DNA from: Octopus sinensis
Taxonomy: Eukaryota
Reading direction: 5' to 3'
Length of the DNA: 64,000 bases
Assembly: GCF_006345805.1 (NCBI RefSeq)
Contig: NC_043006.1
Coordinates: forward strand, 60,202,001-60,266,000
Positions 16,502 to 38,736 of the stretch are shown piece after piece (the first letter of the stretch is position 1; the number at the start of each line of letters is the position of its first letter). The notes under the pieces are model-generated. The model had not been told where the DNA came from. It saw only the letters and a program-made list of their open reading frames with translations, and ran no database searches. The position numbers and the translations under genes were made by a program.

Positions 16502-16562
16502 AGAACTATTAATTTATTTTGATATTTTCAATAATTGTGATACCTGAAATATAATTTTTTAA

Positions 16563-16568: not shown

Positions 16569-16785
16569 ACATATATCTACCACAATTTCGTTGTTTAATC
16601 TATAAATTTAATTTTTTTCATTAGAATGATAGTCAACCGAGTTATCCATTTAACTTTTAGGCTGAGTTATTTCTTATTTGCATTTTAGTATTTCTAATCT
16701 ATTTCCAATATAAACAAAATTTCAACTCAGCCGCGAAAATGCAAACGTAAAAGATTTGATACAATTATATAAAAAATAAATAAAT

Positions 16786-17010
16786 GCGCCCTCTTAAAGC
16801 CTAGCCAGGCTCATGGGCTCGGTTTCCCGGTTTCTATGGCATATGTGTTGCCCAGCTGTACGGGACGCCAGCCCATCGCAGCGTTACTCATTTTTGCCAG
16901 CTGAGTGGACTGGAGCAATGTGAAATGAAGAACACAACGAGTCGTCCGGTCCAGGAATCGAAACCACAACCTTACGATCATGATGCTGACACTCTAACCA
17001 CTGAGCTGCG
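16786..17010 (-). mobile_element. tRNA-derived SINE, family C
   Basis: Minus strand: gctcagtggttagagtg (A box), ggtttcgattcc (B box), gctccagtccactcagctg core. Also at ~39992-40215 and ~51862-52085. Confidence 0.7.
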
Positions 17011-17430
17011 GGAGAAAAACTTTCTTAATCTTTCATGCCGGTCAACGACCCTGCATTGATGAACATCTCTTCCAAAGGGAATATTTGTAGACAACTGCTT
17101 CAAAACCTGTAGCGTCTTTAGACTGATTATAAATTTATATTTATACCAATAATTCTTGGTGAATTATGGTAATGTTTAATTTTTAAAAAATTCTTTTACT
17201 TGTTTCAGTCATTTGACTATGGCCATGCTAGAACACTGACATAAAGGGTTTTAGTCGAAGAAATCTACCCCAGAACTTATTCTTTGTAAGCCTAGTACTT
17301 ATTCTATCGGCAATAGAAATTGCCGAACCGCTAAGTTACGGGGACATAAATGCACTAGCATCGGTTGTCAAGCGATGGCGAGGGGGCATGCAGACAAACA
17401 CACACACACACACACACACACACAGATATA

Positions 17431-18634: not shown

Positions 18635-18661
18635 CACACACACACGCACACACACATACAA

Positions 18662-18708
<47 letters not shown>

Positions 18709-18959
18709 CAACGGAACCTTTCAATTTCCGTCTACCAAATTACCAAATCCATTTACAAGGCTTTGGTCAGCCCGAGGCTATAGTAGTTGACAGTTGTCCA
18801 AGTGCTACGCAGTGGGACTGAACCCGGAACCATGTGGTTGAGAAGCAAGCTTCTTATCGTTAACAAATGTCAACAATCTCAAAAGTGAGCACTTCAGGCA
18901 AAAGAAGTCATCAACAAATAGGTTGTTTGCAAATAAATTTTACAACTGCAGTGTTCAAC

Positions 18960-19497
18960 TGGTACTTATTTTATCGACGCCGAAAGGATGAAAGGCAAAG
19001 TCGATCCCTGCGAAATTTGAACCCAGAAAGTAAAAACGGATCAAATGTCGATAATCATTTTACCCTGCGTGCTAAATTTCCTTATTTCTTTATTGTCCAC
19101 AAGGGGCTAAACATAGTGGGGACAAACAAGGACAGACAAAGGGATTAAGTCGATTACATAGACCTCAGTGCGTAACTGGTACTTATTTAATCGACCCCGA
19201 AAGGATGAAAGGCAAAGTCGACCTCAGCGGAATTTGAACTCAGAACGTAGCGGCAGGCGAAATACCTATTTCTTTATTGCCCACAAGGGGTTAAACACAG
19301 ACGGGACAAACAAAGACAAACAAAGTGATTAAGTCGTTTACATCGACCTTAGTGCGTAACAGGCACTTAATTTATCGACCCCGAAAGGATGAAAGGCAAA
19401 GTTTACCTCGGCGGAATTTGAACTCAGAACGTAACGGCAAATGAAATACGGCTACGCATTTCGGCCGGCGTGCTAACGTCTCTGCCAGCTCGCCGCC
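18960..19497 (-). mobile_element. SINE family A tandem cluster (head + two 184-bp internal units + variant fragment)
   Basis: Repeats of cgaaaggatgaaaggcaaagtcgacctc...gaactcagaacg. Confidence 0.75.
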
Positions 19498-19735
19498 TTA
19501 GTGTGTTTAAATATGAATATCGAAAAAAGAAGGGGTTAAACTAATATACCCTTTGTAATTTTCATAAAGTACACATATCAATATATACTAGTTCCTAGTT
19601 CCGTATGAAGCTATTTTCTGGGGTGACAAATAAGTAAATTTTATTTTAAAGCAAATGGTTCGTTGGGAGACATTTCGACTATAGTCATAACATTCACGCT
19701 CCATATCCGTGAGCTAACCCAGAACTGCATACTAT

Positions 19736-19814
<79 letters not shown>

Positions 19815-19959
19815 TATTTACATGTGTACTTGCCTATATATTGTTTTGATCTGAGATTGTGTGCTGAAACTGGCCATTAGGAAATACACAAAGAAAGTTA
19901 ACTTCAATTAAACTTTTATTTTAAGAACTTTTCGCGGACTGCTTCCTTGTTCTAAGGAA

Positions 19960-20155
19960 TAGACACGATGTTTACGCCAGGGAAAATGGTTGGCGACATT
20001 TCGTCTTCATGTTCTGAGTTCAAATTCCACCGATGTCCACTTTGCCTTTCATCCTTTCGGGGTCGATAAAATAAGTACCCGTTGAGTACTGAGTTCGATG
20101 TTATCGACTTAACCCCTTCTCCGATATTGTTGGCCTTGTGCCAAAATTTGAAAGT
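19960..20155 (+). mobile_element. SINE family A-related element with variant 3' end
   Basis: gagttcaaattccacc B box plus gcctttcatcctttcggggtcgataaaataagtacc core. Confidence 0.6.
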
Positions 20156-21174
20156 AATATTTTTAGAGAATTTGAGCAAAATCAATAAACTGGTAAATAT
20201 CGCACTAATTCCAATGTTCAACAATGAATTGCTAGGTTACCTATTGTCGTTCTTCCAAAATTTGGTTAAATTTCGATACTTTCACCCTCACGAGTTTCAC
20301 TAAGAAAAGAAAAATCAGATTATTCGCATGGAATTAAGTGAAATCGGAAAAAAGGGGTGGGGAAAACTGGACCCCATCCATTCCGGAATCATTGGAATAT
20401 TTTATATTTTCGTTGAATGAATTGCAGTGACCTAATATGCCACAAAATGCTTTTTTGGTCCGGAAAACGGGGTGGAACCCTTGGAAATTTCACCTCCCCG
20501 TTCTCATTGGGAAGTACACCCGCACGATTTTCACTAAGAAAAAAGAAATTCGAATTTTTTTCATGGAATCAAGTACTCTGACCTCCTAATATGCAGAAAA
20601 CCCCATGATTCTTTTCGGAAAAAAGATGGGGAGAGAAGCCGGATCCTCCATCTTGGAATCATTGGATGTTCTTTTTTCGTTGAATGAATTACGGTGACCT
20701 CCTAATATGCCACAAAACCCTTTTTTGGTCCGGAAAACAGAGGGTGGGGCGTGGAACACACGGAAATTTTACCCCACCACTCTCAACATTTTACAAAAAT
20801 ACGTTTTCCAGAGTGCGGATTACTTGGTTCGTTATTCAATAAATAGAGAATGTGGATTAATATGTTCACATGTATATTGTGTGTATTTTATGCTGAAAAT
20901 ATTTTTTGTGAAGTCGTAATGAATGCATATATATATGTATAGATGGCGTGTGTGTCTGTATAAGTAGACAGGTAAAAATTTACCTACAAAGTACTACTTA
21001 CTTCTTTGCTGTCAAATCATTAATTAATCCCAACAAAATACACACTTTTTCTCCACTAAATATTTTCAGTTTTATACCAGTGTTTTAGAAACAGAAAACA
21101 AAAATCTTTCGCGCGCAAACACACTTCGGTTTCTTTTTTGTGTGAGAGGGAGAGAGAGGGAATAAATGTTTTCT

Positions 21175-21430
21175 CAGAACGTAGCGGCAGACGAAATACT
21201 TATTTCTTTACAGCCCAAAAGGGGTTAAACACAGAGAGGACAAACAGGGACAGACAAACAGATGAAGTCGATTACAACGAACCCAGTGCGTAACTGGCAC
21301 TTATTTAATCGACCCGAAAGGATGAAAGGCAAAGTCGACCTCGGCGGAATTTGAACTCCGAACGTAACGGCAGACGAAATACGGCTACGCATTTCACCCC
21401 GGCGTGCCAACGTTTCTGCCAGCTCGCCAC
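21175..21430 (-). mobile_element. SINE family A
   Basis: Same core and head as the element at 9334-9553. Confidence 0.7.
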
Positions 21431-21801
21431 CTTTAAATAGAGGGAAATATTAGAGTTCAATATGAGGAGTTATTTTGGAAAAGGAAGCAAATAAGGAGTA
21501 TATAGGGAAATAGAATGTAGAGATAAAAATAAAAATGTATAAAGATGTTATAGTTACAGTTCCATTTTCCAAGGAAAGTGGTTGAAATGCTTCCTGTCCG
21601 TGGTTTGTAAATTCTAATATGTATGTACACGTGCATGTAGGCGTGTATATGTGCGCACGTGTATGCGTTTATGCATGTATTTAGGGGTATGCGTGTGTGC
21701 GCATATATATATATGTGTATGGATGTGCATGTATGTTTGTATGGGCATCTGTATGTATACGTATGTGCGTATATATTTGTACGTGTATATGTATCTGTAT
21801 G

Positions 21802-21849
<48 letters not shown>

Positions 21850-22433
21850 GATGCATGCATGCATACAGGTTTAAATACACTAGTACGCAAGTCTATATAA
21901 TAATGCATTTCACACACACATACATGTGCATGTGTGCGTGCGTATATCGATATACACTTCTCTCTTTCCTTCTCTCTGATTCCTCTCTCCATACTATAAC
22001 ATTAGCCAGTTGAATAAGCATATAAATCTATTTATAGAAACTTGACCAGTCTTAGTATTCTTCCCTTCCAATTTGTGGTTTACTACTGACTTTAGAAACC
22101 CTCCTCCTATATCTTTTCCTGTACCCATTCCTTAACACCATTCTAACATATCACTCCACCTCACACATATTCACTACATACATTCTTATCACTTCTTACC
22201 CTCCCCTACTCCTCTCCCATCCCCCCCTCATAATATCTTGACCACCATCTAACACTCCTCCTTTCACTTTTTTCACTTCCTTACACTTTTTCATTTTCTC
22301 TTCTTTTTTTCATTTTCTCATCCTGTCTTCATCTTCTCTTCCTATTTCTTTCCTTCTTCTTTTCTCACCTTTTCCTTTGACCTCTTTCTTCATTTTAACA
22401 TACACAGCTCTTCTCCCCTCTCTATCCACTAAC

Positions 22434-22783
22434 ATATGATCACCTAAATCCCCAAACTGCAACCCCTTTGATTATTATGTGTGAGGCGCTGTTGGGCGAG
22501 AGATTAACAAAACTCCTTGTAACACCAAAGATGAACTGAAAGCAAGGATTATGGCAGCATTCACCAACTTAAAGAAAGAGACAGTCCAGAAGAGTTGCAG
22601 GAGATTCCGAAATAGTTTGGATGCTGTGGTTGATCCCAATGGCGATTTTATTGAATAAATTTACTTTTTAGTATTTCAAGATATTTTTATGTAATTTTAG
22701 TAAATATATCTGTTAAAATGAGATGTCGGTGTTATTTTCATTTTTGCATAATTTAAACAACAATATATTCACCACACCCTGTA
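22434..22783 (+). mobile_element. Tc1/mariner 3' remnant (transposase C-terminus + right TIR end + TA)
   Basis: SP.CNPFDYYV*GAVGREINKTPCNTKDELKARIMAAF...NGDFIE* (stop at 22656-58) matches the WPPxSPDLNP region onward. It ends ...caccacaccctg|TA. Also at 45458-45804 and 59340-59689. Confidence 0.8.
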
Positions 22784-23553
22784 TGTGTGTTTTACTGTAT
22801 ATGTTAGTTTTACTGTCTCCTTGCCTTAAATTCGAGCAGTGGTTTTGTGTGTCATTAATGCAAGAGATGTTCTTCGTTTTCAGCCTTCCACATAATCAGG
22901 CCTAGGCTTGGATACCTTTCCCATCGACTATCCTCACATGCTTCCATATGAGGGTTGGCGACGGGGGTGACATTCGGCTATACAAAATCTGTCTGTTCCA
23001 TGCGAGCGTGGACGTTTCATATATATTCATATTGCATGGATTATAATATTTTCAACCGAAATGTTACAACCGTATCTGATTGATCAAGTGCTTCAGTTCT
23101 GCTTATGTACATATATTTACTCCATTGCTAGCATTTATCAATGGTTTCTCTCATTGTCTCGATGCACCATTTTCTATCATTAATAAAACCGTCGACATTT
23201 TTGACAACACAGGTATGCTTGTTTGCTAATAATATCTTGTATTAAAAACTAAGTGTGGACGTGAAAATGCTTCTACATTTGTGCTTTAAATGTAAACTTG
23301 TTAAAATGTTAGCCCTTCGTTTAATGGAATAACGGCAAGAGTTTGTTTTAGTGTAATTAATAACATTTGTTGGGTTTTAGATGCGTGAAACGTGTAATAG
23401 ATTTCCACCCTTTCTCCTTCCAAAGGGTTTTTTCTTTGTCTTAGTAGCTATTGTTTCTAACTGCAATCATTTCGAGACACATCGTTAATAAAACTCATTT
23501 ACACATTTCACCATAATTCTATGCCTCCGTTTTATTTCTCGCTGTATACGTAC

Positions 23554-23754
23554 GGCGCAGGCATGGCTGTGTGGTAAAAAGCTTGCTCCCCAATCACATG
23601 GTTCCAAGTTCAGTCCGTGGCACCTTGGGTAAGTGTCTTCTACTTTAGCCTCGGACCGACCAAAACCTTGTGAGTGGATTTGGTAGACGGAAACTGAAAG
23701 AAGCCTATCATATATATATATATATACACACACACGCACACACACGCACACACA

Positions 23755-23795
<41 letters not shown>

Positions 23796-24020
23796 ACACA
23801 CACACACACACACACAAATGAATATGTTTTGTGTCTGTCGCTTGACAACTGATACTGGTGTATTTAGGTCCCAGTAATGTAGCGGTTCGGCAAAATAGTC
23901 CGATAGAATAAGTACTCGGCTTACAAAGAACAAGTTCTGCGGCGGATTTCTTCGACTAAAACCTTTTAAGGTGGTGCTCCAGCATGGCTGTAGTTAAATG
24001 ACTGAATCAAGTAAAAGAGT
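23554..24020 (+). mobile_element. SINE family B with internal (TA)n(CA)n
   Basis: ggcgcaggcatggctgtgtggtaa...ggttccaagttcagtcc head; 3' end tgactgaatcaagtaaaagag. Confidence 0.75.
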
Positions 24021-24368
24021 ATATATATATTTAAAACGTTTTGAGATTGTCTCTACAGATTCTCTATCGAAATTATAGCCAGCACTGATTTGTGACAACA
24101 TTTCATATTCAAATACGTCTAATGTAAACAGTGCAATCGAAGATAGAAAAAGTATGTAATGGATTTATATGAACATTGCCTCAACACATCTAACCCATTA
24201 ACTGTTCACGAACTCATTGTTTAAATAGCTACAAAATATAGCGGTGCAACACTAGTGGATCTACCAGTTGTACACATCTATAGTCTTCATTGTAACTACC
24301 TTGATTTCCCCTATGTGACACTTTTAAAAATCTCACCTTAATTTTCTCCCCTGTCTCCCCTACTACCT

Positions 24369-25269
24369 GACATAGATGCCAATTTAAAGAATGCCACAGT
24401 ATTGAAATATGCAGACGACATCAAGCTGTACCTTGAAATCAAGAGGACAGATCCTGATGTCTACAACTCTTTCCTGCAATCAGACCTAGACACAATGCAG
24501 CAATGGATCACAGACTGGCAACTGAAACTGGCCGTGGACAAGTGTACCACCATGCATTTTGGGAGAAAAAACCCTGCGTCCACATACTCCCTCCACAACA
24601 CTGATATCAAGAAATCCTCTTGCGAGCGTGACCTAGGCATCACTGTCAGCAGTGATTTGCGTTGGACAAAGCATATCTCTAAAATTGTCAAGAAGGCCGA
24701 GGGTGTCTTGGCATCACTCAGCAAGACTTTTGTTAGCCGCTCTCCAGCCATCTATTTAAAACTGTATACAGCTATGGTACGACCACACTTGGAATTCGCA
24801 TCATCAGTTTGGAACCCCTATCTTGCTCAGAACATTGACCTCCTGGAATCTGTCCAGAGACGTGTAACCAAACGTATACCGTCCATCAGACACCTACCAT
24901 ATTCTGAGCCCATTGTTTCCCTGGGAATGGATTCACTGAAGCTCCGGCGTCTGGCGACGGACTTGGTAAACACCCACAAAGTTATCAACCACCTCACCAA
25001 CAACAACACTGAACACCTTTTTGATCTCCATGTGTCTAACACACGTGGACATGCCTACAAAGTCAGAAAACAACACAGCTCCCATGACTTTCGGAAACAT
25101 TTTTTCACGCTCAGAGTTGCTGAAGCATGGAATAAACTGCCTGCGTCAGTTGTTGACTGCCATGACACTGCATCCTTTAAGGCCCTCATGCTTTCCGAAA
25201 TCCGCCGAAACTACACCTGATTATATATACACTTTAGATGAGTTGTAGTGCACCTGAGCACTGTACACA

Positions 25270-25306
<37 letters not shown>
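24369..25306 (+). mobile_element. 5'-truncated CR1-group LINE (RT YADD to C-terminus, 3' UTR, (TTA)n tail), copy 1
   Basis: The ORF 24402-25220 contains KYADD, ERDLG, LYTAMVRPHLEF..VWNP, LESVQRRVTK and FFTLRVAEAWNKLP. Homology starts abruptly at DIDANL, and the element ends in a (TTA)n tail. Confidence 0.9.
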
Positions 25307-25307
<1 letters not shown>

Positions 25308-25933
25308 TTACCGTTGCTCTATTTTAATTTACCTCTCTCCCTTTCTCTCTCTCTCTCACTCTCTCTCTATCCAACATTTCCTCTGCTTTTCCTGTCACCT
25401 GCTTCTGCTGATCACCACTCTTTTCTATCGCCCTTTGCGTCCAATTATATTTAGATTATATTTAGATGAAGGTCATTTTATTATTCTCCCCGTGCACTAG
25501 AACTCTTCCTCTTTCAAGAGGAAAGGCACCATCCTTTATACTCTGTATCTACTTGTTTTCTACAAGTTTTATATTTCCCCTCTGTGCGTTTTCAGTGGCA
25601 AAACTTGATTTCATTTCGTTCAAACTGGTAATTTCCAGACTAATCATCGAAACGGTTCCTAACCGCCGAAATCGTGTAACTCTTGCAGCATTATAGACCC
25701 TTGGGCAAATCACTGCACAGGGCTCTATAGTATTTATTTATTGACAGCAAGCCACGTCATACAAAGATTAGGATTGGACCCTTAGACCTATGAGGCCCCT
25801 AGACAACTGCGTATTGTGCCGATGCTTTGAAGTAGCACTGGACTCTGTATTAAAAACGTCGGCTGATGAAATGGGTTTATATGTATGTCTGTCTTTTCTT
25901 CTCTCCTTTGATTGTCGTACATGACATGGTAAG

Positions 25934-26168
25934 AAGGCGGCGAATTGGCAGAATCGTTAGCACGCCGGCGAAATGCGTAGCCGTATTTCGTCTGCTGTTA
26001 CGTCTTGAGTTCAAATTCCGCCGAGGTCGACTTTGCCTTTCATCCTTTCGAGGTCGATAAATTAAGTACCAGTTACGCACTGGGGTCGATGTAATCGACT
26101 TAATCTGTTTGTCTGTCCTTGTTTGTCCTGTCTGTGTTTAGCCCCTTGTGGGTAGTAAAGAAATAGGT
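25934..26168 (+). mobile_element. SINE family A, full length
   Basis: aaggcggcgaattggcagaatcgttag...gagttcaaattccgcc...aaagaaatagg. Also at 48955 and 62844. Confidence 0.8.
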
Positions 26169-26249
26169 AAGCATTCAAACAGTATACGCATATACACACA
26201 CGTATTCATATACACAAGTACGCACACATGCATATATATATATATATAT

Positions 26250-26280
<31 letters not shown>

Positions 26281-26826
26281 TATATATATATAGAGAGAGT
26301 GTGTGTATATATGTACGTATGTGTATACATATGAATATATGGATATGCAAGTTATTCATAAGAAATAAAGACACGGGTCGAAGAACCCGAATTCTATTAA
26401 AACCCCGGGGGAACAACATCACCACGACGACTATTATTATCACTGCTGCTGGTTACTCGACGGCTACAGCCACTCTTATAGAAAACAAGTCTTGACGACA
26501 CTTTTTAATTTACCAAAACAGATAGTAGCAATTTGCCGTCACAGACAGTTCAATTGTCATGCCACGAAAATTGACGGAAACTACCACGTGCTCTTGCAGA
26601 AAAAGGAAAGTAAACTATGAATGTTAACTTTAATTTTAACTTTATTTTATTAATAGCTCTTTCCTCTCTACATATTCCATTTTAGTACATATTTTTGAAA
26701 AGGTTGTTCAAAAATCGAAACATGTAAAACAAATCTAAAACATTCTTCTTTTAATGTATTTATATAAAGGAAAATTAAAATGTGCCCAACTTTTGAAAGT
26801 AGCATTTTAGTTCTTTTTTCATAAAT

Positions 26827-27230
26827 CTGTGTGGTAAGTATCTTGCTTACCAACCACATGGTTCCGGGTTCAGTCCCACTCGTGGCACCTTGGGCACGTG
26901 TCTTCTGCTATAGCCTCGGGCCGACCAAAGCCTTGTGAGTAGATTTGGTAGACGGAAACTGAAAGAAGCCCGTCGTATATATGTATATGTATATGTATGT
27001 GTGTGTATATGTTTGTGTCTGTGTTTGTCCTCCCAACATCGCTTCACAGCCGATGTTGGTGTGTTTACGTCCCCGTAACATAGCGGTTCGGCAAAAGAGA
27101 CCACTAGAATAAGTACTAGGATTCCAAAGAATAAATCCTGGGGTCAATTTGGTCGACTAAAGGCGGTACTCCAGCATAGCAGCAGTCAAATTACTGAAAC
27201 AAGTAAAAGTAAAAAGTAAAATAAGTAAAA
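26827..27230 (+). mobile_element. SINE family B
   Basis: ctgtgtggtaagtatcttgc...ggttcagtccc...tgaaacaagtaaaag. The copy in unit 3 begins at ~63746. Confidence 0.75.
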
Positions 27231-27461
27231 GGATATATATATATATATATGGCAATAATAATTCTCTAAATGAGATATAGACAGTGACTGCTCCGTAATA
27301 TAAGGGGTATTAGCCAACCGAATATGGCTAGGGACAGGGCAGAGTGGTGGGGGTGTCACTGTTGCATTTAGCCCCAGGCGAACATCAACGTCACCAGATA
27401 GGCCTGACGCCATCACGGCGTCCTCTCTCTTGCAAAGGGAGATCACTCACCAAGAAGCCGA

Positions 27462-27515
27462 TACCACACACGGACCTAGGTTTCAAGGTGTATTGCCTAT
27501 TATCAACGTGTGGTA
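27462..27515 (-). ncRNA. Type-I hammerhead ribozyme candidate with U3-A8 core
   Basis: Minus strand: UACCACACG-UUGAUAA-U-AGG caauaca CCU-U-GAAA-CCUAG-GUC/CGUGUGUGGUA. Stems I, II and III all form, stem III is palindromic (ACCUAGGU) and the cleavage triplet is GUC. Confidence 0.7.
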
Positions 27516-27806
27516 GGCATCGCTTCTCAATGAACGACCAACTTTGCAAGATATATATAAGGATTTTCAAGTAAATACATTTACTGATTTCGAAAATCTG
27601 TTCGACAGCAATAATAATTCTCTAAATGAGATATAGACAGTGACTGCTCCGTAATATAAGGGGTATTAGCCAACCGAATATGGCTAGGGACAGGGCAGGG
27701 TGGTGGGGGTGTCACTGTTGCATTTAGCCCGAAATCAGTAAATGTATTTACTTGAAAATCCTTATATATATCTTGCAAAGTTGGTCGTTCATCGAGAAGC
27801 GATGCC

Positions 27807-27860
27807 TACCACACGTTGATAATAGGCAATACACCTTGAAACCTATGTCCGTGTGTGGTA
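27807..27860 (+). ncRNA. Type-I hammerhead ribozyme candidate with U3-A8 core (inverted-arm copy)
   Basis: taccacacg TTGATAA t agg caataca cct t GAAA cctat GTC cgtgtgtggta. One G>T change breaks the stem III palindrome. Confidence 0.62.
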
Positions 27861-28473
27861 TCGGCTTCTTGGTGAGTGATCTCCCTTTGCAAGATAGAGG
27901 ACGCCGTGATGGCGTCAGGCCTATCTGGTGACGTTGATGTTCGCCTGGGGCTAAATGCAACAGTGACACCCCCACCACCCTGCCCTGTCCCTAGCCATAT
28001 TCGGTTGGCTAATACCCCTTATATTACGGAGAAGTCACTGTCTATATCTCATTTAGAGAATTATTATTGCTGTCGAACAGATTTTCGAAATCAGTAAATG
28101 TATTTACTTGAAAATCCTTATATATATCTTGCAAAGTTGGTCGTTCATATATATATATAGAAATTCGGGTGAGTACTTGATAATTGTAAGCACCTGTATA
28201 TACCGTTTGGTGGTGTAGGTGGTGGAGTAAATTAATCATAATTAAAACATGATGCCAAGGATTCAGCGGTACATATGTTTCGGGCCTTTATTAGACGGAT
28301 TTATAACAATGTATAATGTATGTCTGTGGCCTTCTTATATATATATATATAGAAATATATATATATAGAAATTCGGGTGAGTACTTGATAATTGTAAGCA
28401 CCTGTATATACCGTTTGGTGGTGTAGGTGGTGGAGTAAATTAATCATAATTAAAACATGATGCCAAGGATTCA

Positions 28474-28551
28474 GCGGTACATATGTTTCGGGCCTTTATT
28501 AGACGGATTTATAACAATGTATAATGTATGTCTGTGGCCTTCTTCAGCCGC
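28474..28551 (-). ncRNA. Type-I hammerhead ribozyme in Penelope pseudo-LTR (sense to ORF)
   Basis: GCGG-CUGAAGA-A-GGCC...GGCC-C-GAAA-CAUAU-GUA/CCGC, with palindromic stem III ACAUAUGU. Confidence 0.75.
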
Positions 28552-30256
28552 GCACAACAACTTCCACAAGGACATGTATTACATCAAAAATTCTTGGTTG
28601 GTGATGCAAATCCTCTCATTCGCGTACGACATAATGCGGCAACAGCATAAAAATGAAGCGTCCATCTCGTTCTTCTCTCAATGTAGAATGAAGAAATTTG
28701 GATGTTGAAGTAATGTAAATAAATTAATAAACAAATATATACATATATAAATATATAAATGCAGACAGACGTGAAGGAACCTGGTAATAAGAGTAAATAG
28801 AGATAAAGATGGAGGGGCGAGAATTCAGGACGAAGGATAAAAAATATATAAAAAGTGTAAGTATAGAAAAATATAAAAATGTAGAGTATAAAGATATAAA
28901 GAGATATAAAAAAATATAAATGAATATAAAGTTATAAAAATAAAGTTATAAAAATAAAAATAGAAATAAAAATAATAAAAAATGTAAAAGAATATAAGGA
29001 TAAGGGATATATAGTAGTTACGGACCAAACATGGTGGTCAGGGAAATGACAAATTCTGGTTGTAGAAGTCTTGGGTGTCATAAATCAACAGGGGCGTCTG
29101 GGGACTTAGTGTATTGTAAATCAGAGTTGTTGAGCAGCTTATCTAGTTCCTCTAGTTCTTCGTAACGTATTAAGTGGTCATCTTGTACATACGTACCCAC
29201 ATGGATACATACACCCATATACACGCGCACATATATGCACGCATACCCAGCCACAAGCATATAAGCATACATACGTACTCACGTGTAAACATATACAGAT
29301 ACACATATACACATACACACATGCGCATATATATATATATACACACACATGCGCATATATATATATATACACACACAACAGAATATGCATATATATACAC
29401 GGACAATATACATGTACATATACATACACACACACACACACATACTTATATACATACATATATATATACACATACACATATGCATACATATATATGCACA
29501 TGTATACATATACATACATACACATATACATACACACACGTATATATATATACTCACACCCATACCCACACACGCACATATATATGTGTGCATACATGCA
29601 CACCCACGTGTGCATACATACACGCATACATACATACACACGGACCCACGCGCACGTATCCACACGCACACACACACACATCTGTGTGTCTATACGCGCG
29701 TGTGCGCATACCCTTACATACACATACACAGATGCCCACACATACAGGTATAGAAATAAGATATTAAAAGATGTATAAAAATTAGAAATGAAGTATAAAA
29801 ATTATAAAAACTATAAAAATTAAAATAAAGAATGAAAATAAAAATAAGAATAAAGGTAAAGCAAAATAAAATAGGATAAAATAAAATAAAAATATAATCG
29901 GGTAAAGCTTAACATGAGATGAAGGTAAAAATAAAAGGTGGTTGAAAGTGTAAAGTTAAAGGTGTGTGCTAAAGGTGACCACGTAGGGGCGGGCAGGGGG
30001 AACTGAAAATTGGAAGGGTGGGAAGCGGGGTTTGGTGGTGCGTGCTCAACATCAGAGTTAGAAATGGGAAAAGGTATAGATATAGGGAAACAAAAAATCT
30101 AGATAGGAAGAATGTAGGTGTAGGAGAAGAAAAAACATATATGGGAGACAAAATGTGTATATATAGGAAAATATATATATAGGAAAACGGGATGCGCTGG
30201 AGCCGACAGGTTGCACCGGGTGGGGGCAAATTGCATGGGGGAGCTGGTATAATAGC

Positions 30257-30576
30257 CTAAGCTTTGTAGTATTTGAAAGTATTAATAAGTTTGTGTATAC
30301 AGGATGGTTTGAACTCTGACCTTTTGTTAATAAGATTGTGTTTCTCCTTGAATTTCAAGATATTCAGGAGTTCTACACAACATAGTTGGCATCCTGCTCT
30401 ATTGTTTAAATAAGGTGCAGCTGATCCGGTGATGGACCACCTGATTTTGAAACCTATGCTATTGTCTTTTAATTCCCAAATTTTTTAGAAAGGGAGGTGC
30501 TGTTAGCTTTATGCCTATGCTTAAACGAGGACCGGTGGTTGTAGTATCTAGATTTCCAGGAGGTCGAGCAACCTAA
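30257..30576 (-). pseudogene. Penelope-type GIY-YIG endonuclease C-terminal fragment (one frameshift)
   Basis: LGCSTSWKSRYYNHRSSFKHRHKANSTSLSKK/IWELKDNSIGFKIRWSI...CQLC...NLINKRSEFKPSCIHK...*. The frameshift lies in the T run at ~30481. Confidence 0.8.
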
Positions 30577-30621
30577 ACCAAGAATTTTGATGTAATACAT
30601 GTCCTTGTGGAAGTTGTGTGC

Positions 30622-30699
30622 GCGGCTGAAGAAGGCCACAGACATACATTATGCATTGTTATAAATCCGTCTAATAAAGGCCCGAAACATATGTACCGC
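30622..30699 (+). ncRNA. Type-I hammerhead ribozyme in the inverted Penelope pseudo-LTR
   Basis: gcgg CTGAAGA (30626-32) aggcc...ggccc GAAA (30684-87) catat GTA (30693-95) ccgc. Confidence 0.75.
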
Positions 30700-30732
30700 T
30701 GAATCCTTGGCATCATGTTTTTATTTTGATTA

Positions 30733-30791
<59 letters not shown>

Positions 30792-31190: not shown

Positions 31191-31427
31191 TAGTATTGCT
31201 GTCTATAAACACATTGATTAAAACGTGATGATAAGAAGAGAACTTATTTAACCACCACCTTGTGAAACACCTCTGATACTATTGTTTGTTATCGTAAGAA
31301 GGCCCAACCTATTTATGAATAGTTTATTTTTAGGAAGAAAGAAACCATATTTTTGCTGTTTCTAAATACGGAATTTGTAAAGCCAATTAATTCCCACGTG
31401 TATGCAGTTGATCACGTTTATGCGGCC

Positions 31428-31462
31428 TATATAAAGCGTACGTTTGAGACGTTTGTCAAACT
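31428..31462 (+). promoter_or_regulatory. TATA box and Inr-like site, copy 2
   Basis: TATATAAAG at 31428-31436, with the same spacing as in copy 1. Confidence 0.55.
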
Positions 31463-31533
31463 CATCCTTGTTTCGGTAAACAACACCACCAGTCTACAAG
31501 AGGCAGAAAGAAAAGATAAACCAACTGGCCAAC

Positions 31534-31590
31534 ATGCTGCGACTATTGCTACTAGTAACAGTCGTATTTATTATGGGAACAGCTACAACA
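31534..31590 (+). CDS. Exon 1 (signal peptide), copy 2; 1-nt deletion relative to copy 1
   Basis: ATG at 31534 and GTAAGT at 31591. It is 57 nt instead of 58, so out of phase as assembled. Confidence 0.6.
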
Positions 31591-31770
31591 GTAAGTAAAT
31601 TACACCGCTATTCATAATTCATTTCTTTCTTATTTTAAAGTTATTTCGTTCAATTTATCAACAGTAGTGTTATTACAACTAACTTATCCATGCATGTTAT
31701 TTAAAATAATCGGTGCTACCTAAGACATTTTTCAGTTTTGGCTCTAATTTCTATAGAAAATCTAGAGATA

Positions 31771-31802
<32 letters not shown>

Positions 31803-33438
31803 ACAGACACACATATATATGCATGCATGTATGTATGTATATGTATCATATACATCTATACCTAACTCTCTATATTTATATAACCACAATGGGTAGAGCC
31901 CACACCGTCGCTCCAAATACGTGGCTTCACTACTACCGAGGATCTCCCCTGGTTTCTGACAAAGGTACATCTTTAGCATCTATAGGATCGCTTTTCAAAA
32001 TCTAGCCCTTCTGTTTAGGAACCAGAATACACTTTAGTATCCAGCAGGTGTTGTCATTCTACAAGGCTTACTTGAAACCCACAATAAGTACTACTGCCGC
32101 AAGTAAAACAGTGAACAACTTGCGTGATGACATATTGGACGCATCGAGACAAAGACCATTGATTAGAATTCAGTCACTAATGAGTACACTCCAATATCTG
32201 TGGACGGGTGCACTGTGTCTCTCTGTCTTTTCAATCGCTATTCTAATGGCCTCTGTTTCTGGGGACTGGTTTTGTCTCGTACTACCACCACCAGGCACAA
32301 TCGACCCACTCGTCTCTGCAACAATTTTGAAGAGCAGGAGTTAGTTGATACCATAGATCTCATTACTTGACTGGCGGGTATACTGGGCTTCATATATTTT
32401 ACCCCAGTTTAACTTTGATGGCAAGCACAACTCTGTCATTCAGTAATAATCGATCTCAGAGAGATGAACAACAAAGTTGATTTCGACGAGAGGCGAACTC
32501 AGCAATAAAACACAATTTTGGAACGGGATACAGCCTATTCCATACTTAAAACGTGAGGTCGACTGTTTCTACCGGTGATCTATCACTTTCGAAAAGCATA
32601 AATAACAACTTTAGGTAGAAAATGAAATTAGATGGAAAAATTATTCAAAAATTACGTTATCTTTTATCTACCGCCGTGCTTTTGGCGTATATCAGCAAAA
32701 TTCCACATTTTTTCCTTGCTCCACCTTTGGTGCCTCCACTCTGTCTTATTCTCTTTCATTTTAGTCATGTCGATGCTTCATTTTCATGCTATTGTCTCTC
32801 TCCACAACCCAACTCCTATTCTTCTGGTATAGTTTGTAAGCTCGTTCTTGTCACCTCCTTATCACCTTCCTCCTCAAGCTCCTTCTCATTCTCTTTTTTC
32901 TTTTTCTGCCTTCTCGTTCTTTTCTTTTTCACTTATTTACTACTGTGAACGCCTCTTCTGTTATACTACCTATTTATTTACTACCCACATGGGGCTAAAC
33001 ACAGAGAGAACAAACAAGGACAGACCAACGGATTAAGTCGATTTTACCGACCCCAGTGAATAACTGGTACTCCGACAGGATGAAAGGCAAAGTCGACCTT
33101 TGAACTCAGAATTTGAACTCAGAACGTAACGGCAGACGAAATAAGGTTTCACATTTCGCCCGGGGTGATAACGTTTCTGCCAGCTCGCCGCCTCTTCTGT
33201 TACTACCGTCTCCTTCACACATTCTAGCACCACTTCGTCTTCCTTCTCTTATTCTTCAGGCTATTCCATCCATTGCTCCTCCTCTTTTGGGAACCTTGCT
33301 TTCATGTGGTCTTTCTCCCAAATACATAGCATATAGGAAGCATACCCTCCACTACTATCAGCCTCAACATACTCTAGTAAAAATTATTTCCTCTGTAATT
33401 TGTTTTAAGTCATTTAATCTTGCTTGTACGGCCATCTC

Positions 33439-34660
<1,222 letters not shown>

Positions 34661-35149
34661 TATAAACATACATATGAATATGTATATACACATATGTATA
34701 TGCATATATATATAGGTATAGTGAACATTTTTGAGATATTTAAGGTTCAAAAATAGCAACGTCTTGAGGATATTCTTTTTCAAGTTGGAATAATGTTAAT
34801 GTTAATTACTTTATGTAACTTATTGTTTTTGATGATTCTAATTTCTTTGAGGAGGTCGGTACTCCATAGATGCGTAATTTTGTCAGTTGGTTTTCTGTTT
34901 ATTTTCCTGAGAGGAGATTTCAATGCTGGTTAAAAGGAATTGATCCTTCTTACCTGTTTTCTTTGTGTCTTGGTATGGTTCTATGGTGTTTGTAAGGTCA
35001 GTCGGACTAGCACGTGTACTTCGACGCTTCCTGACCACATATCACCTTTTGTTAAATCTGCCTCGATTACTCTCCCATACTGATACAGGATGTTTCGAAC
35101 CTATCGTTGTAAGTAACAAAGTTTCCCTTGTGTTGCATTTTCTATCATT

Positions 35150-35210
<61 letters not shown>

Positions 35211-35215
35211 ATGTG

Positions 35216-35247
<32 letters not shown>

Positions 35248-35256
35248 TACATGTAT

Positions 35257-35290
<34 letters not shown>

Positions 35291-35737
35291 AATATATATA
35301 TACACGTACATATTAGTGATAAACAGAAAGATAGATGGAGATGCAGACGAGTTATTGCAACTTTATACTCTACGCGCGTACTGAGTTCTTTATCTCCTAG
35401 AATTTAGCCAAACTATAACTATATATATATATATATATAGACACGTATGTATAGTTATGCGTTGTTTTATTAGCCTGTATGTGTGTGCGTCAACATAACA
35501 AAAAGTTCTCATCATCACGATATCTGAAAACTGTTTTCGGATACATACTGCAAAGTATCTGTATATTTCGGGCTGTACATTCCAACCATTTCTAAAGAAT
35601 AATGTCGCTCGATATTATTCTTTGAGAATTTATAGATATATCATAATCACATACTTACGCTAGAATATATAACATGTTCTTCTTTCAGGAACATTGTAGT
35701 TGTTGATTGAAATAATTATTGTTTCTCTTCTTTACAG

Positions 35738-38736
35738 ACGAATGTACATATAATGGAAAGAAGTATACAGGAGTATTTAAGATCGACTGCAACACGTGTG
35801 TATGTGACACAAATAACAAAGCAATTTGTTCAAATTTACGTTGTGGTTATGGGAAGGGGCCTTCATGTACATATCAAGGCAGACGTTACAGAGTAGGACA
35901 GACATTCCAGCAGTCTTGTAATACATGTAAATGCAACTATGATGGCCAGATAAAATGTGACAACAAAGACTGTCCTAAACGATGTACTTATAAAGAAAAG
36001 CAGTACCAAGAAGGTGAAGAATTCAATGACAACTGTTATAAATGTAAATGTCTTTCTTCTGGATATGTTCAGTGTACCAATAATGTGTGTCAGTGCCAAT
36101 ACAATGGTAAAGACTACAATATTGGAGAGAGTTTTAACGATGGCTGTAAGACTTGCACTTGTCAAACTAGAGAATAGTGCAGTGTAACAGTGATAGATGT
36201 GGATGTCCTTATAAAAAGTACAATATCAAATCGGCCAAACCTTCACTGATGATTGCAATACTTGCGAATGTTTGAACAATGGTCAGGTTAAATGTACTAG
36301 CAAAATTTGTAAGTGTTACTTCAGAGGAAGAGTATTAGTGTGGGCCAGAAATTTGAAGGGGATTGTAACATTTGCTATTGTAGAGACAACGGTCAGTTAG
36401 AATGTACAAAGAAAATTTGTCAATGTACTTATCAAGGACAGACATACCGAGTTGGACAACATTCAGTAATGATTGTAACCAATGTGAATGTTTAAGAAGC
36501 GGTATTGTGCAGTGCTCTAACAAACCATGTAAGTGTATATACAATGGAAACACCTACGAAATAGGGACTACATTTAAAAAGGACTGTAATACGTGCACAT
36601 GCAAAGCCGATGGGACAGTAGACTGCACAAAAATGTCATGTACCTGTACTTATAAATATAATGTTTATAATTTCGGAGCAGAGTTCAAGGATGATTGTAA
36701 TACTTGCAGATGTAAAAATAACGGACAAGTTGATTGTACAAACAGACCCTGCCACTGTACTTATAAAGGACAAACTTATGGAATTGGTAATAGATTTTCG
36801 GACGATTGCAATCAATGCGAATGTTTAGCAACTGGATATGTCCGATGTTCAAACTATCTTTGTCAATGTAAGTACAACAACAAGATATATAAAGTAGGAG
36901 AAACATTTAAACAGGGCTGTATACGTGCACATGCAAAGCCGATAGGACTGTAGACTGCACAACAAAGCCATGTACCTGTACTTATAAATATAATGTTATG
37001 ATTTCGGAGCAGAGTTCAAGGATGATTGTAATACTTGCAAATGTAAAAATAACGGACAAGTTGATTGTACAAACAAACCCTGCCGCTGTACTTATAATGG
37101 ACAAACTTATGAAATTGGTACTAAATTTTCGATGGGTTGCACTCAATGCGAATGTTTAGCTACTGGATCTGTCATATGTTTAGCCGATGTTTGTGAATGT
37201 AAGTACAACAACCAGATATATAAAGTAGGAGAAACATTTAAACAGGGCTGTAATACGTGCACATGCAAAGCCGATGGGACTGTAGACTGCACAACAAACC
37301 CATGTACCTGTACTTATAAATATAATGTTTATGATTTCGGAGCAGAGTTCAAGGATGATTGTAATACTTGCAAATGTAAAAATAACGGACAAGTTGATTG
37401 TACAAACAGACCCTGCCGCGCTGTACTTATAAAGGACAAACGTATGGAATTGGTAATAGATTTTCGGACGATTGCAATCAATGCGAATGTTTAGCAACTG
37501 GATATGTCCGATGTTCAACCTATCTTTGTCAATGTAAGTACAACAACCAGATATATAAAGTAGGTGAAACATTTAAACAGGGCTGTAATACGTGCACATG
37601 CAAAGCCGATAGGACTGTAGACTGCACAACAAACCCATGTACCTGTACTTATAAATATAATGTTTATGATTTCGGAGCAGAGTTCAAGGATGATTGTAAT
37701 ACTTGCAAATGTAAAAATAACGGACAAGTTGATTGTACAAACAGACCCTGCCGCTGTACTTATAAAGGACAAACTTATGGAATTGGTAATAGATTTTCGG
37801 ACGATTGCAATCAATGCGAATGTTTAGCAACTGGATATGTCGATGTTCAACCTATCTTTGTCATGTAAGTACAAAAACCAGATATATAAAGTAGGAGAAA
37901 CATTTAAACAGGGCTGTAATACGTGCACATGCAAAGCCGATAGGACTGTAGACTGCACAACAAACCCATGTACCTGTACTTATAAATATAATGTTTATGA
38001 TTTCGGAGCAGAGTTCAAGGATGATTGTAATACTTGCAAATGTAAAAATAACGGACAAGTTGATTGTACAAACAAACCCTGCCGCTGTACTCATAAAGGA
38101 CAAACTTATGGAATTGGTAATAGATTTTCGGATGGTTGCAATCAATGCGAATGTTTAGCAACTGGATATGCCCGATGTTCAACCAATGTAGGTCAGACAT
38201 TTAGAAAGGACTGTAATACGTGCACATGCAAAACCGATGGGACAGTAGACTGCACAATAAACCATGTACCTGTACTTATAAAAATAAGGTTTATAATTTC
38301 GGAAATCAATTCAAAGATGCTGCAATACTTGTACTTGTCAATATAATGGTGAGGTTAGCTGCACTGAATTACCTTGTCCCTGTAATTACAACGGTAAAAT
38401 TTATGAAATTAGTTCTGTATGGTATAATGATTGCAACAAATGTCAGTGCAACTCCGATGGGAAAGTCGATTGTGAGCAAAAACCATGCAGTAGTCCTGTA
38501 TACATAAAGGAAAAACTTATTCTGTCGGTGAAACATTTAAAGATGCCTGCAATACTTGTAGATGTGGACAGTTTGGTCAAATAAGCTGTACTAAAATGTA
38601 CTGCCCCCCGACAAAATGCCAGTATTATGGAAAATCTTACAAAGATGGAGAAATGTTCATGAGTCAAGATAAGTGCAATGTTTGTCGATGTTCTATTGGA
38701 AAGGTCAAGTGTACCAAGTATGACTGCTATCGTCTG
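35738..38736 (+). CDS. Exon 2, copy 2: ~27 six-Cys modules (4 ABC triplets); many frameshifts as assembled (errors or pseudogene)
   Basis: Same acceptor (35737) and donor (38737). A-module starts at 36867, 37198, 37533 and 37864. The first frameshift at ~36170 gives a premature TAG. Confidence 0.7.

What the first reader, a model, noticed from the sequence alone, without database searches (positions are those of the whole stretch)
27252..28148. Retrozyme-like 356-nt element with a non-canonical U3-A8 hammerhead ribozyme
Seen: a 356-bp monomer occurs as 1.34 tandem copies followed by 1.17 inverted copies. The two arms start at different points of the monomer (circular permutation) and are flanked by (TA)n. 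Each arm holds a full type-I hammerhead fold (27462-27515 minus; 27807-27860 plus): stem I UACCACACG/CGUGUGUGGUA, core UUGAUAA, stem II AGG/CCU, GAAA, stem III ACCUAGGU (palindromic) and GUC cleavage triplet. Stem I extends through CGAU/AUCG, GAAGC/GCUUC and a 10-bp UCUUGCAAAG/CUUUGCAAGA helix, and the rest of the monomer has further hairpins (GACGCC/GGCGUC, UAGCCA/UGGCUA, ACAGUGAC/GUCACUGU). Established: C3-G8 is a tertiary Watson-Crick pair in the active hammerhead, and U3-A8 is a tolerated but rare compensatory form. Metazoan non-LTR retrozymes are monomers of a few hundred nt with type-I hammerheads that yield circular RNAs, and palindromic stem III permits dimeric cleavage. Inference: this is a retrozyme family that CUGANGA-based screens would miss. 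Caveats: the first stem II position is U.U, and no two hammerheads lie in the same orientation here, so this locus alone cannot excise a monomer.
Basis: partly seen in the sequence, partly recalled or inferred. Interest (0 to 1): 0.92.

Follow-up and report, generated by a model that had tools for sequence, protein, structure and literature searches.

The report
Hammerhead-ribozyme retroelement insertion, dead-end copy
This is most likely one stranded insertion of a small non-coding "retrozyme"-type mobile element carrying a hammerhead self-cleaving RNA motif with a rare but already published core variant; it is a plausible new family of a known kind, not a new kind of element.

Summary
A 356-bp unit occurs as 1.35 copies (27252-27730, ribozyme strand = minus) joined head-to-head to 1.18 inverted copies (27730-28148, plus). 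The whole structure sits inside a (TA)n tract.

Each arm holds one type-I hammerhead-like motif with core UUGAUAA (U3-A8). It matches Rfam HH9 only below threshold (19.4 bits against 52). One detail is wrong: the plus arm reads ACCUAUGU, which breaks the helix III palindrome.

- **Architecture:** it matches the experimentally self-cleaving axolotl retrozyme hammerhead HHR_Amex2 feature for feature, apart from the U3-A8 swap. That swap was published in 2014 for hammerheads of Penelope-like elements.
- **Insertion signature:** partial tandem, inverted 5'-truncated copy and a (TA)n target together form the published signature of Penelope-like elements.
- **Strand signal:** the enclosing hairpin has 8 G·U pairs and no A·C, so it is an RNA helix on the ribozyme strand.

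No second locus could be found in the window or in any searchable collection. Family conservation, catalysis and circular RNA therefore remain untested. This locus cannot release a monomer. Verdict: probable new member of a known kind, moderate interest.

The parts
27233..27250 (.). (AT)9 tract, left half of the presumed (TA)n target microsatellite. It directly follows the (GTAAAA)n tail of a SINE-like repeat (26830-27232).
27252..27730 (-). Arm 1: 479 nt = 1.35 units, ribozyme-sense on the minus strand. The sense 5' end is at 27730 (monomer phase s219) and the sense 3' end is at 27252 (s341), abutting the AT tract. It consists of a full unit (27252-27607) plus a 123-nt partial unit (27608-27730, 1 mismatch).
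27450..27525 (-). Hammerhead-like motif with an intact palindromic helix III.
- Stem I: CACACG/CGUGUG
- Core: U3 U4 G5 A6 U7 A8 A9
- Stem II: U·U then AGG/CCU, loop CAAUACA
- G12 A13 A14, A15.1-U16.1, C15.2-G16.2, tetraloop CUAG, C17
- Predicted cleavage between 27473 and 27472
   Evidence: Rfam HH9 at 19.4 bits; descriptor hit; the homodimer minimum-energy fold is a double hammerhead
27422..27552 (-). About 127-nt hairpin that extends stem I. Energy is -56.6 kcal/mol (z = -6.8), with 8 G·U pairs and no A·C. The complementary strand folds at only -41.7 and not as a rod.
27730..28148 (+). Arm 2: 419 nt = 1.18 units, ribozyme-sense on the plus strand. The sense 5' end is at 27730 (s1), joined head-to-head to arm 1 with 1 nt of overlap. 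The sense 3' end is at 28148 (s63), abutting the AT tract. It differs from arm 1 by 5 substitutions and 0 indels.
27797..27872 (+). Second hammerhead-like motif, identical to the first except U for G at 27846. Helix III reads ACCUAUGU, so the palindrome is lost. The 2-bp stem plus tetraloop is retained. Predicted cleavage is after 27849.
   Evidence: not reported by Rfam even at E<=10
27770..27896 (+). Hairpin extending stem I in arm 2. Energy is -61.2 kcal/mol, z = -7.8. The C at 27793 pairs with G, where arm 1 has U·G.
28147..28159 (.). (AT)6 tract, right half of the presumed (TA)n target.

Best explanation
The locus is a single, non-autonomous, dead-end insertion of a roughly 356-nt hammerhead-bearing retroelement of the metazoan non-LTR retrozyme type.

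Proposed life cycle of the family (inferred from the published model, not shown here):
1. Tandem master copies are transcribed.
2. The type-I hammerhead cuts after GUC. It probably does so mainly as a dimer, through the palindromic helix III ACCUAGGU.
3. The 356-nt linear RNA is circularised by a host tRNA ligase.
4. The circular or multimeric RNA is reverse-transcribed at a nicked (TA)n microsatellite by the RT-endonuclease of an autonomous Penelope-like element.

At this site the process left more than one unit on each side (1.35 and 1.18 units), arranged head-to-head with both 3' ends against the TA tract. The 3' ends lie at different monomer phases (s341 and s63), and neither lies at the cleavage site (s120). 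That fits a template with no fixed 3' end, meaning a circle or a multimer.

The ribozyme core carries the compensatory U3-A8 pair and a U·U at the base of helix II. Both have natural precedents, so I expect weak, dimer-dependent activity rather than none.

Each arm contains only one hammerhead, so this locus cannot release a unit-length RNA. The plus arm has additionally lost the helix III palindrome.
For: Shown here:
- Repeat geometry and TA flanks.
- Only two descriptor hits in the window, both in the arms, against 0.02-0.03 expected per shuffled window.
- Rfam HH9 partial match with conserved UAC, GAAACCU..AGGUCC and loop 2 CAAUA-type sequence.
- The homodimer of the minus copy folds as a double hammerhead with an 8-bp intermolecular helix III as its minimum-energy structure.
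- The hairpin around the motif is strongly stabilised on the ribozyme strand only. Energies are -56.6 against -41.7, with 8 G·U and 0 A·C, binomial about 0.004.
- One of the five inter-arm substitutions is C-G to U·G in that helix.
- The unit is 356 nt and 45% GC. The longest stop-free translation is 80 aa, and none has a homologue among 5.8 billion proteins.
- The head-to-head orientation is only obtained if the hammerhead strand is taken as sense.

From papers:
- Penelope-like-element insertions are partial tandems, often with an adjacent inverted 5'-truncated copy, and show (TA)n bias (PMC8557442).
- U3-A8 covariation and opposite-strand dual motifs occur in such hammerheads (PMC4209133).
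- HHR_Amex2 of the 353-nt axolotl retrozyme has the same U·U base, 3-bp stem II, 2-bp helix III and palindromic tetraloop. It cleaves 22% per hour as a monomer and much better as a dimer, and gives circular RNA in vivo (PMC7229834).
- Mussel retrozyme units are 350-390 bp.
- Retrozymes are proposed to be non-autonomous derivatives of Penelope-like elements, and monomer loci are common (bioRxiv 10.64898/2026.07.22.740005).
Against: - Only one locus is available, so there is no test of conservation or covariation across copies.
- The Rfam score is far below the gathering threshold (19.4 against 52), and only one arm is reported.
- On a genome scale, a descriptor with 0.02-0.03 chance hits per 64 kb would produce many false positives.
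- G10.1, a known metal ligand (PMC7151607), is replaced by U.
- The hammerhead fold is about 6 kcal/mol less stable than the competing rod for a monomer.
- No Penelope-like reverse transcriptase is in the window. The only RT fragment is a YADD non-LTR type.
- The source organism is not established.
- Arm 1 shows no clear microhomology at its junction with the TA tract.
Confidence: 0.6

Rival explanations
1. Relic with a dead ribozyme. The element descends from a hammerhead-bearing Penelope-like or retrozyme repeat, but the U3, A8 and U10.1/U11.1 changes are decay. The family, if any, no longer self-cleaves or makes circles, and the locus is simply old repeat debris.
For: - The score is below the Rfam threshold.
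- Three or four positions deviate from the canonical core and stem II base.
- The plus arm carries a further helix III substitution.
- Published min-HHRs of Penelope-like elements have low in-vitro activity (PMC4209133).
- The locus has only one ribozyme per arm.
Against: - The two core changes are exactly the compensatory pair, which is unlikely for two random hits among about 11 constrained positions.
- All other core positions are intact in both arms.
- The U·U base is present in an active natural ribozyme.
- The 8:0 G·U to A·C bias indicates that the RNA structure was maintained.
- The arms are only 1.5% diverged.
Confidence: 0.2
2. Chance resemblance. This is a local low-copy tandem or foldback repeat with a stable hairpin whose apical region happens to fit a relaxed hammerhead descriptor. 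The inversion and TA flanks would then come from microsatellite-associated rearrangement, not retrotransposition.
For: - There is no other copy in 64 kb and none in viral or metagenome scans or the protein-space search.
- The region is rich in rearranged repeats. There is a 208-bp perfect duplication and a 2.5-kb inverted-repeat structure next door, inside a segmental duplication.
- TA tracts make up 3.5% of the window.
- The relaxed descriptor has a non-zero false-positive rate.
Against: - Given a pre-existing hairpin, the odds of core, GAAA and UH sitting in exact register at its apex are well below 1e-6 (my estimate).
- Helix and loop architecture matches HHR_Amex2 feature for feature.
- The strand that gives the hammerhead is also the strand with the G·U-rich helix and the strand that makes the arms head-to-head.
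- The negative searches covered collections that do not hold this kind of genome: the closest homologue of a window-encoded exon is only 40% identical.
Confidence: 0.12
3. The inverted arm is an assembly artefact (chimeric or palindromic long read, or mis-join). The true locus would then be a simple short tandem array.
For: - The window contains a 100-N scaffold gap (49699-49798).
- There are 100%-identical local duplications.
- PMC8557442 notes that such structures cause assembly problems.
Against: - The arms differ by 5 substitutions with no indels, and they start at different monomer phases. They are therefore not a mirrored read.
- The arrangement is the expected biological signature of Penelope-like-element insertion.
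Confidence: 0.08

Closest known systems
Axolotl non-LTR retrozyme Rtz_353 with HHR_Amex2 (Cervera & de la Pena 2020, PMC7229834)
   Same: - Unit length is 353 against 356 nt.
- Both have a type-I hammerhead with a U·U mismatch at the base of a 3-bp helix II.
- Helix III is 2 bp (A15.1-U16.1, C15.2-G16.2) capped by a palindromic tetraloop (ACGU against CUAG).
- Both are expected to depend on dimers.
- In both, helix I is closed by the rest of a rod-like monomer.
   Different: - The core is CUGAUGA (C3-G8) there and UUGAUAA (U3-A8) here.
- The cleavage triplet is GUA there and GUC here.
- There is no sequence similarity outside the motif.
- The axolotl family has about 60,000 copies in tandem arrays with shown cleavage and circular RNA. 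Here there is one locus and nothing has been shown.
U3-A8 min-HHR variants in pseudo-LTRs of Schistosoma mansoni Penelope-like elements (Cercyon) (Cervera & de la Pena 2014, PMC4209133)
   Same: - The same core covariation, U3-A8 in place of C3-G8.
- An association with Penelope-type retroelements.
- Frequent occurrence as single motifs, or as two motifs 100-700 bp apart on opposite strands.
   Different: The Schistosoma motifs are minimal hammerheads: no or vestigial helix III, a long helix II of 7-8 bp and a short helix I. Here the architecture is the canonical retrozyme type, with a 3-bp helix II and a helix III plus tetraloop. The repeat unit is 356 bp rather than a roughly 3-kb element.
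Penelope-like element insertion structure (Arkhipova lab; PMC8557442)
   Same: Partial tandem, an adjacent inverted 5'-truncated copy forming inverted repeats, and insertion into (TA)n microsatellites that obscures target-site duplications.
   Different: There is no RT/GIY-YIG ORF. The unit is 356 bp, so this would be a non-autonomous passenger. The clade reported with (TA)n bias (Naiad) lacks canonical hammerheads.
Rfam Hammerhead_HH9 (RF02275), clan CL00010
   Same: Full-length alignment to the model (positions 1-77). It shares UACC in the helix I internal loop, an A-rich loop 2, and GAAACCU..AGGUCC.
   Different: The score is 19.4 bits against a gathering score of 52. Positions 3 and 8 and the first helix II pair are changed, and the helix III loop is shorter.
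Mussel (Mytilus galloprovincialis) retrozymes, 350-390 nt (PMC7229834)
   Same: Invertebrate host, the same unit size, and a type-I hammerhead with helix III GAAAC-GCGC-GUC, a palindromic tetraloop.
   Different: The mussel elements have a canonical CUGAUGA core and a G-C base pair in helix II. There is no sequence similarity beyond the motif.

Membership tests
Hammerhead ribozyme, type I | Three-helix junction with helices II and III capped and helix I open, in the order: helix I 5' arm, core, helix II, GAAA, helix III, H17, helix I 3' arm | tested here: met
   Descriptor hits at 27816-27849 (+) and 27506-27473 (-), with helix I 6 bp, helix II 3 bp and helix III 2-3 bp. Rfam HH9 gives a full-length alignment.
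Hammerhead ribozyme, type I | Conserved core C3 U4 G5 A6 N7 G8 A9 / G12 A13 A14 / A15.1-U16.1 / H17 | tested here: inconclusive
   All positions are canonical except 3 and 8, which are U and A together. This is a Watson-Crick covariation with a published natural precedent (PMC4209133). The strict CUGANGA consensus is not met (0 canonical hits).
Hammerhead ribozyme, type I | Score at or above the curated Rfam gathering threshold for a hammerhead model | tested here: not met
   No hit at gathering thresholds. The best hit is HH9 at 19.4 bits against 52, on the minus arm only.
Hammerhead ribozyme, type I | G10.1-C11.1 pair closing helix II (metal-binding G10.1) | tested here: not met
   It is U·U in both arms. 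The same U·U occurs in the active axolotl HHR_Amex2, so it is not disqualifying for function.
Hammerhead ribozyme, type I | Site-specific Mg2+-dependent self-cleavage 3' of position 17 | not testable with these tools
   This needs in-vitro transcription of monomer and dimer constructs.
Metazoan non-LTR retrozyme | Short non-coding repeat unit (about 150-450 bp, GC below 50%) carrying one type-I hammerhead | tested here: met
   356 bp and 44.9% GC. Stop-free translations reach at most 80 aa and have no homologue. There is one motif per unit.
Metazoan non-LTR retrozyme | Tandem arrangement with at least two hammerheads in the same orientation, so that a unit can be excised | tested here: not met
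   The arms are 1.35 and 1.18 units and each contains one motif. The two motifs lie on opposite strands. This holds for this locus only and says nothing about master copies elsewhere.
Metazoan non-LTR retrozyme | Multi-copy family in the genome with a conserved ribozyme | not testable with these tools
   - There is no other copy in the 64-kb window.
- The source genome is not in any searchable collection: exact-protein look-ups found nothing.
- The six-frame protein search found nothing.
- Viral and metagenome pattern scans were empty.
Metazoan non-LTR retrozyme | Expression as unit-length linear and circular RNA | not testable with these tools
   No transcriptome data are available here. The predicted circle is structured (-110 kcal/mol, z = -5.1 on the sense strand).
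Penelope-like-element type insertion (as passenger) | Partial tandem plus an adjacent inverted 5'-truncated copy, with 3' ends outward | tested here: met
   Arm 1 runs s219 to s341 on the minus strand and arm 2 runs s1 to s63 on the plus strand. Their 5' ends meet at 27730.
Penelope-like-element type insertion (as passenger) | Insertion into a microsatellite, typically (TA)n | tested here: met
   There is an (AT)9 tract at 27233-27250 and an (AT)6 tract at 28147-28159. TA tracts cover 3.5% of the window, so p is about 0.035 for a random insertion.
Penelope-like-element type insertion (as passenger) | Autonomous Penelope-like element (RT plus GIY-YIG) with a related pseudo-LTR in the same genome | not testable with these tools
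   None is in the window. The only RT fragment (24342-25220 and its paralogues) is of the YADD non-LTR type.

The most novel reading that the evidence does not exclude
The unit belongs to a live retrozyme family, possibly in a cephalopod. Its canonical-architecture type-I hammerhead would work with a U3-A8 core pair and a U·U helix II base, and would produce 356-nt circular RNAs. That would be the first retrozyme-type (not minimal) hammerhead with the swapped tertiary pair. This locus, with two arms longer than one unit ending at different phases and not at the cleavage site, would also be a direct genomic footprint of rolling-circle reverse transcription of a circular RNA by the machinery of Penelope-like elements.
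Probability: 0.3. Interest if true: 0.55.

Novelty: new member of a known kind. Interest (0 to 1): 0.4.

Why it matters
If the family is real and active, it would do four things:
- Extend non-LTR retrozymes to another invertebrate lineage.
- Give a natural, selected example of the C3-G8 to U3-A8 swap in a full tertiary-stabilised hammerhead.
- Show that screens restricted to CUGANGA under-count retrozymes.
- Provide a clean insertion footprint bearing on how circular RNAs are reverse-transcribed and integrated by Penelope-like elements.

If it is a lone relic, it is ordinary repeat annotation.

Tried and rejected
1. **Rfam at gathering thresholds, whole window.** Nothing found.
2. **Permissive Rfam scan, whole window.** It was swamped by 740 simple-repeat hits to microRNA models and was uninformative for hammerheads.
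3. **Looking for further copies.**
   - blastn of the monomer against the window found none.
   - An exact-product look-up of the 76-aa ORF found nothing.
   - A 370-aa concatenate of all six-frame stop-free segments against 5.8 billion proteins gave no hit at E<=1e-3.
4. **Trying to identify the genome or reach an orthologous locus through window-encoded proteins.** Exact look-ups of the 272-aa RT ORF and the 283-aa pacifastin/VWC ORF found nothing. A homology search gave only three hits, the best at 40% identity on a 2.2-kb contig. The source genome is therefore not in these collections.
5. **Paralogous empty or filled site.** The element lies just past the end of a segmental duplication copy. 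One paralogue is cut by the N gap and the other by the window end.
6. **Penelope-like element in the window.** Rejected. The RT fragment is a YADD non-LTR type and no GIY-YIG domain was seen.
7. **tRNA head for the upstream SINE.** ARAGORN found none.
8. **MAFFT alignment with published retrozyme hammerheads.** It mis-registers the loops, so I made the comparison by hand from the sequences.
9. **First circular-fold shuffle script.** It timed out and was rerun successfully.
Full report
**Observation.** The region was read directly and analysed for repeats.
- A 356-bp unit is present as a full copy (27252-27607) plus a 123-bp partial direct copy (27608-27730, one mismatch).
- This is followed by an inverted arm, 27730-28148: 341 nt at 98.5% identity, then 78 nt at 100%.
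- I take the plus-strand arm as reference (s1 = 27730). The ribozyme-sense strand of arm 1 is then the minus strand, running s219-356 and then s1-341. Arm 2 is on the plus strand, running s1-356 and then s1-63.
- The arms therefore meet 5'-to-5' at 27730 with one shared base. Their 3' ends face outward and abut AT/TA tracts at 27233-27250 and 28147-28159.
- The arms differ by five substitutions and no indels.
- No other copy exists in the 64-kb window.

**The hammerhead claim.** Rfam at curated thresholds finds nothing.
- A permissive local scan gives Hammerhead_HH9 at 19.4 bits (gathering score 52, E=0.084 for 2.4 kb x 4227 families), on the minus arm only. Rescaled to that one family over the whole window, this is about 1e-3 (my arithmetic).
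- I wrote a descriptor that accepts CUGANGA or UUGANAA, one mismatch at the first helix II pair, helix II of at least 3 bp, helix III of at least 2 bp and helix I of at least 5 bp. It hits only the two arms and gives 0.033 hits per dinucleotide-shuffled window, or 0.02 with helix I of at least 6 bp.
- The motif is therefore beyond chance for this window. A genome-wide scan with so relaxed a descriptor would yield many false positives, so the context has to carry weight.
- All core positions are canonical except 3 and 8, which have changed together to U and A. The first helix II pair is U·U.
- One detail is wrong. The plus arm has U at 27846, so helix III there is ACCUAUGU and not palindromic. 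The self-duplex energy falls from -11.4 to +0.4 kcal/mol.

**Folding.**
- Unconstrained, each 76-nt motif prefers a rod (-23.4 kcal/mol) over the hammerhead junction (-17.2 when constrained). This is usual for type-I motifs with a 2-bp helix III.
- Two minus-arm motifs cofold into a textbook double hammerhead. It has an 8-bp intermolecular helix III and open cores, and it is the minimum-energy structure (-49.8). The plus-arm variant does not do this.
- The motif sits at the tip of a roughly 127-nt hairpin (z = -6.8 and -7.8).
- The complementary strand folds much worse (-41.7, not a rod). The reason is that the sense helix holds 8 G·U pairs and no A·C oppositions, including six G·U in one 18-bp helix.
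- A decaying DNA palindrome should show both kinds equally, and 8 of 8 has a probability of about 0.004. This is an RNA-level helix on the same strand as the hammerhead.
- One inter-arm substitution (27793 C / 27529 U) keeps that helix paired (C-G against U·G).
- The whole unit folded as a circle gives -110 kcal/mol (z = -5.1) on the sense strand and -96 (z = -2.5) on the antisense strand. The part outside the hairpin is unremarkable (z = -1.8).

**Comparison with published elements.** The published construct sequences (PMC7229834 supplement) allow a direct comparison.

| Motif | 5' helix I | Core | Helix II base | Helix II and loop | Base | GAAA and helix III | 3' helix I |
|---|---|---|---|---|---|---|---|
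| Axolotl HHR_Amex2 | CACCUCA | CUGAUGA | U | GCC-CACUA-GGC | U | GAAAC-ACGU-GUA | UGGGGUUG |
| This window | CACACG | UUGAUAA | U | AGG-CAAUACA-CCU | U | GAAAC-CUAG-GUC | CGUGUG |

- Both share the U·U base, the 3-bp helix II, the 2-bp helix III and the palindromic tetraloop. The units are 353 and 356 nt.
- HHR_Amex2 cleaves 22% per hour as a monomer and much better as a dimer. Its unit accumulates as circular RNA in axolotl tissues.
- The only architectural difference is the 3-8 pair. The U3-A8 covariation was reported in 2014 for hammerheads in the pseudo-LTRs of Schistosoma Penelope-like elements, with about 1,300 hits from a U3-A8 descriptor. The same paper noted pairs of motifs 100-700 bp apart on opposite strands (PMC4209133).
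- That C3-G8 is a tertiary Watson-Crick pair whose double mutants retain activity is established biochemistry. I recall this (Martick & Scott 2006; Przybilski & Hammann 2007) but could not retrieve the papers here.

**The insertion architecture.**
- Penelope-like elements characteristically insert as partial tandems. They often have an inverted 5'-truncated copy adjacent at the 5' end, and they show a bias for (TA)n microsatellites that obscures target-site duplications (PMC8557442).
- The present locus has all three signatures. The head-to-head reading holds only if the hammerhead strand is the sense strand, and that agrees with the G·U asymmetry.
- TA tracts occupy 3.5% of the window, so landing in one is mildly non-random.
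- The period is 356 bp, not about 3 kb, so this is not a truncated autonomous element.
- Both arms exceed one unit and end at different phases (s341 and s63), neither at the cleavage site (s120). I infer a circular or multimeric RNA template. This is inference, not demonstration.

**What the locus can and cannot do.**
- Each arm has one motif, so neither can release a unit. A read-through transcript would be cut at most once.
- A transcript spanning both arms would fold into a roughly 340-bp double-stranded hairpin. This is speculative and could be relevant to small-RNA silencing.
- I therefore regard the locus as a dead-end daughter insertion.
- The arms are 1.5% diverged, similar to the 1.2-1.5% divergence between copies of the surrounding segmental duplication. 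The paralogous sites are hidden by the N gap and the window end, so the insertion cannot be dated.

**Limits.**
- Every attempt to obtain further copies or the source genome failed. Conservation, covariation, copy number, expression and catalysis are all untested.
- The window looks metazoan. It has pacifastin/VWC exons, a CR1-like LINE fragment and a multi-copy SINE. From memory the SINE resembles the abundant octopus SINE, but I could not test this. Octopus genomes do contain recently active Penelope-like elements (PMC13282606).

**Verdict.**
This is very probably derived from a hammerhead-bearing retroelement of the retrozyme / Penelope-like-element type.
- Its two 'non-canonical' features each have published natural precedents, and the inversion is the expected insertion signature rather than an oddity.
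- It is best filed as a probable new member of a known kind, of moderate interest. The genome-wide copy census and a cleavage assay are the decisive missing pieces.

Noticed in passing
window 7678-64000: There is a large segmental tandem duplication. Copy A runs about 7678-27081, copy B about 31348-49698 (cut by the 100-N gap at 49699-49798), and copy C runs 49799-64000 (equivalent to A 14728-27081). Identity is 95-99%. The hammerhead element lies about 170 bp beyond the last aligned base of copy A, so no paralogous site is visible.
   Followed up: partly
window 1-6700: A short-period TG/TA-rich satellite is open in all six frames, with ORFs up to 974 aa. Self-identity is 82-91% at many offsets. 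It produces hundreds of spurious sub-threshold Rfam hits to mir-297, mir-3149 and mir-5014.
   Followed up: no
window 11505-15456, 36402-38184, 49799-50564: Tandem units of about 332 bp encode repeated Pacifastin_I / VWC / FnI_RECK-like cysteine-rich domains (Pfam E down to 6e-33). The closest protein in the 5.8-billion-protein collection is only 40% identical.
   Followed up: partly
window 24342-25220 (paralogues 47423-48241, 61321-62139): A 5'-truncated non-LTR (LINE) reverse-transcriptase C-terminal fragment with a YADD motif gives a weak RVT_1 hit. It is not a Penelope-like element.
   Followed up: partly
window 26830-27232: A SINE-like interspersed repeat has an internal (TG/TA)n tract and a (GTAAAA)n tail. 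At least 8 diverged copies (74-88% identity) occur in the window, and ARAGORN finds no tRNA head. From memory it resembles the abundant octopus SINE, which I did not test. The hammerhead element is inserted in the AT tract right after its tail.
   Followed up: partly
window 28147-28544: A perfect (100%) tandem duplication of a 208-bp unit starts with the (TA)n tract immediately 3' of the element. Its origin is unknown: slippage, insertion-associated or assembly.
   Followed up: no
window 28228-28610 and 30570-30790: Part of the duplicated segment plus about 70 further nt recurs inverted about 2 kb downstream at 97-98% identity. Each copy is preceded, in its own orientation, by (TA)n, including a (TA)27 tract at 30736-30789. 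The pair encloses about 2 kb of AT-rich and microsatellite sequence with no convincing ORF. This looks like a roughly 2.5-kb foldback or TIR-bounded non-coding element adjacent to the hammerhead element.
   Followed up: no
window 27563-27602 / 27735-27774 / 28080-28130: The AT-rich part of the monomer contains a nested hairpin (GAUUUUC...GAAAAUC with AGUAAAU/AUUUACU inside). The head-to-head junction at 27730 falls inside its 5' stem, so it is possibly a template-switch site.
   Followed up: no
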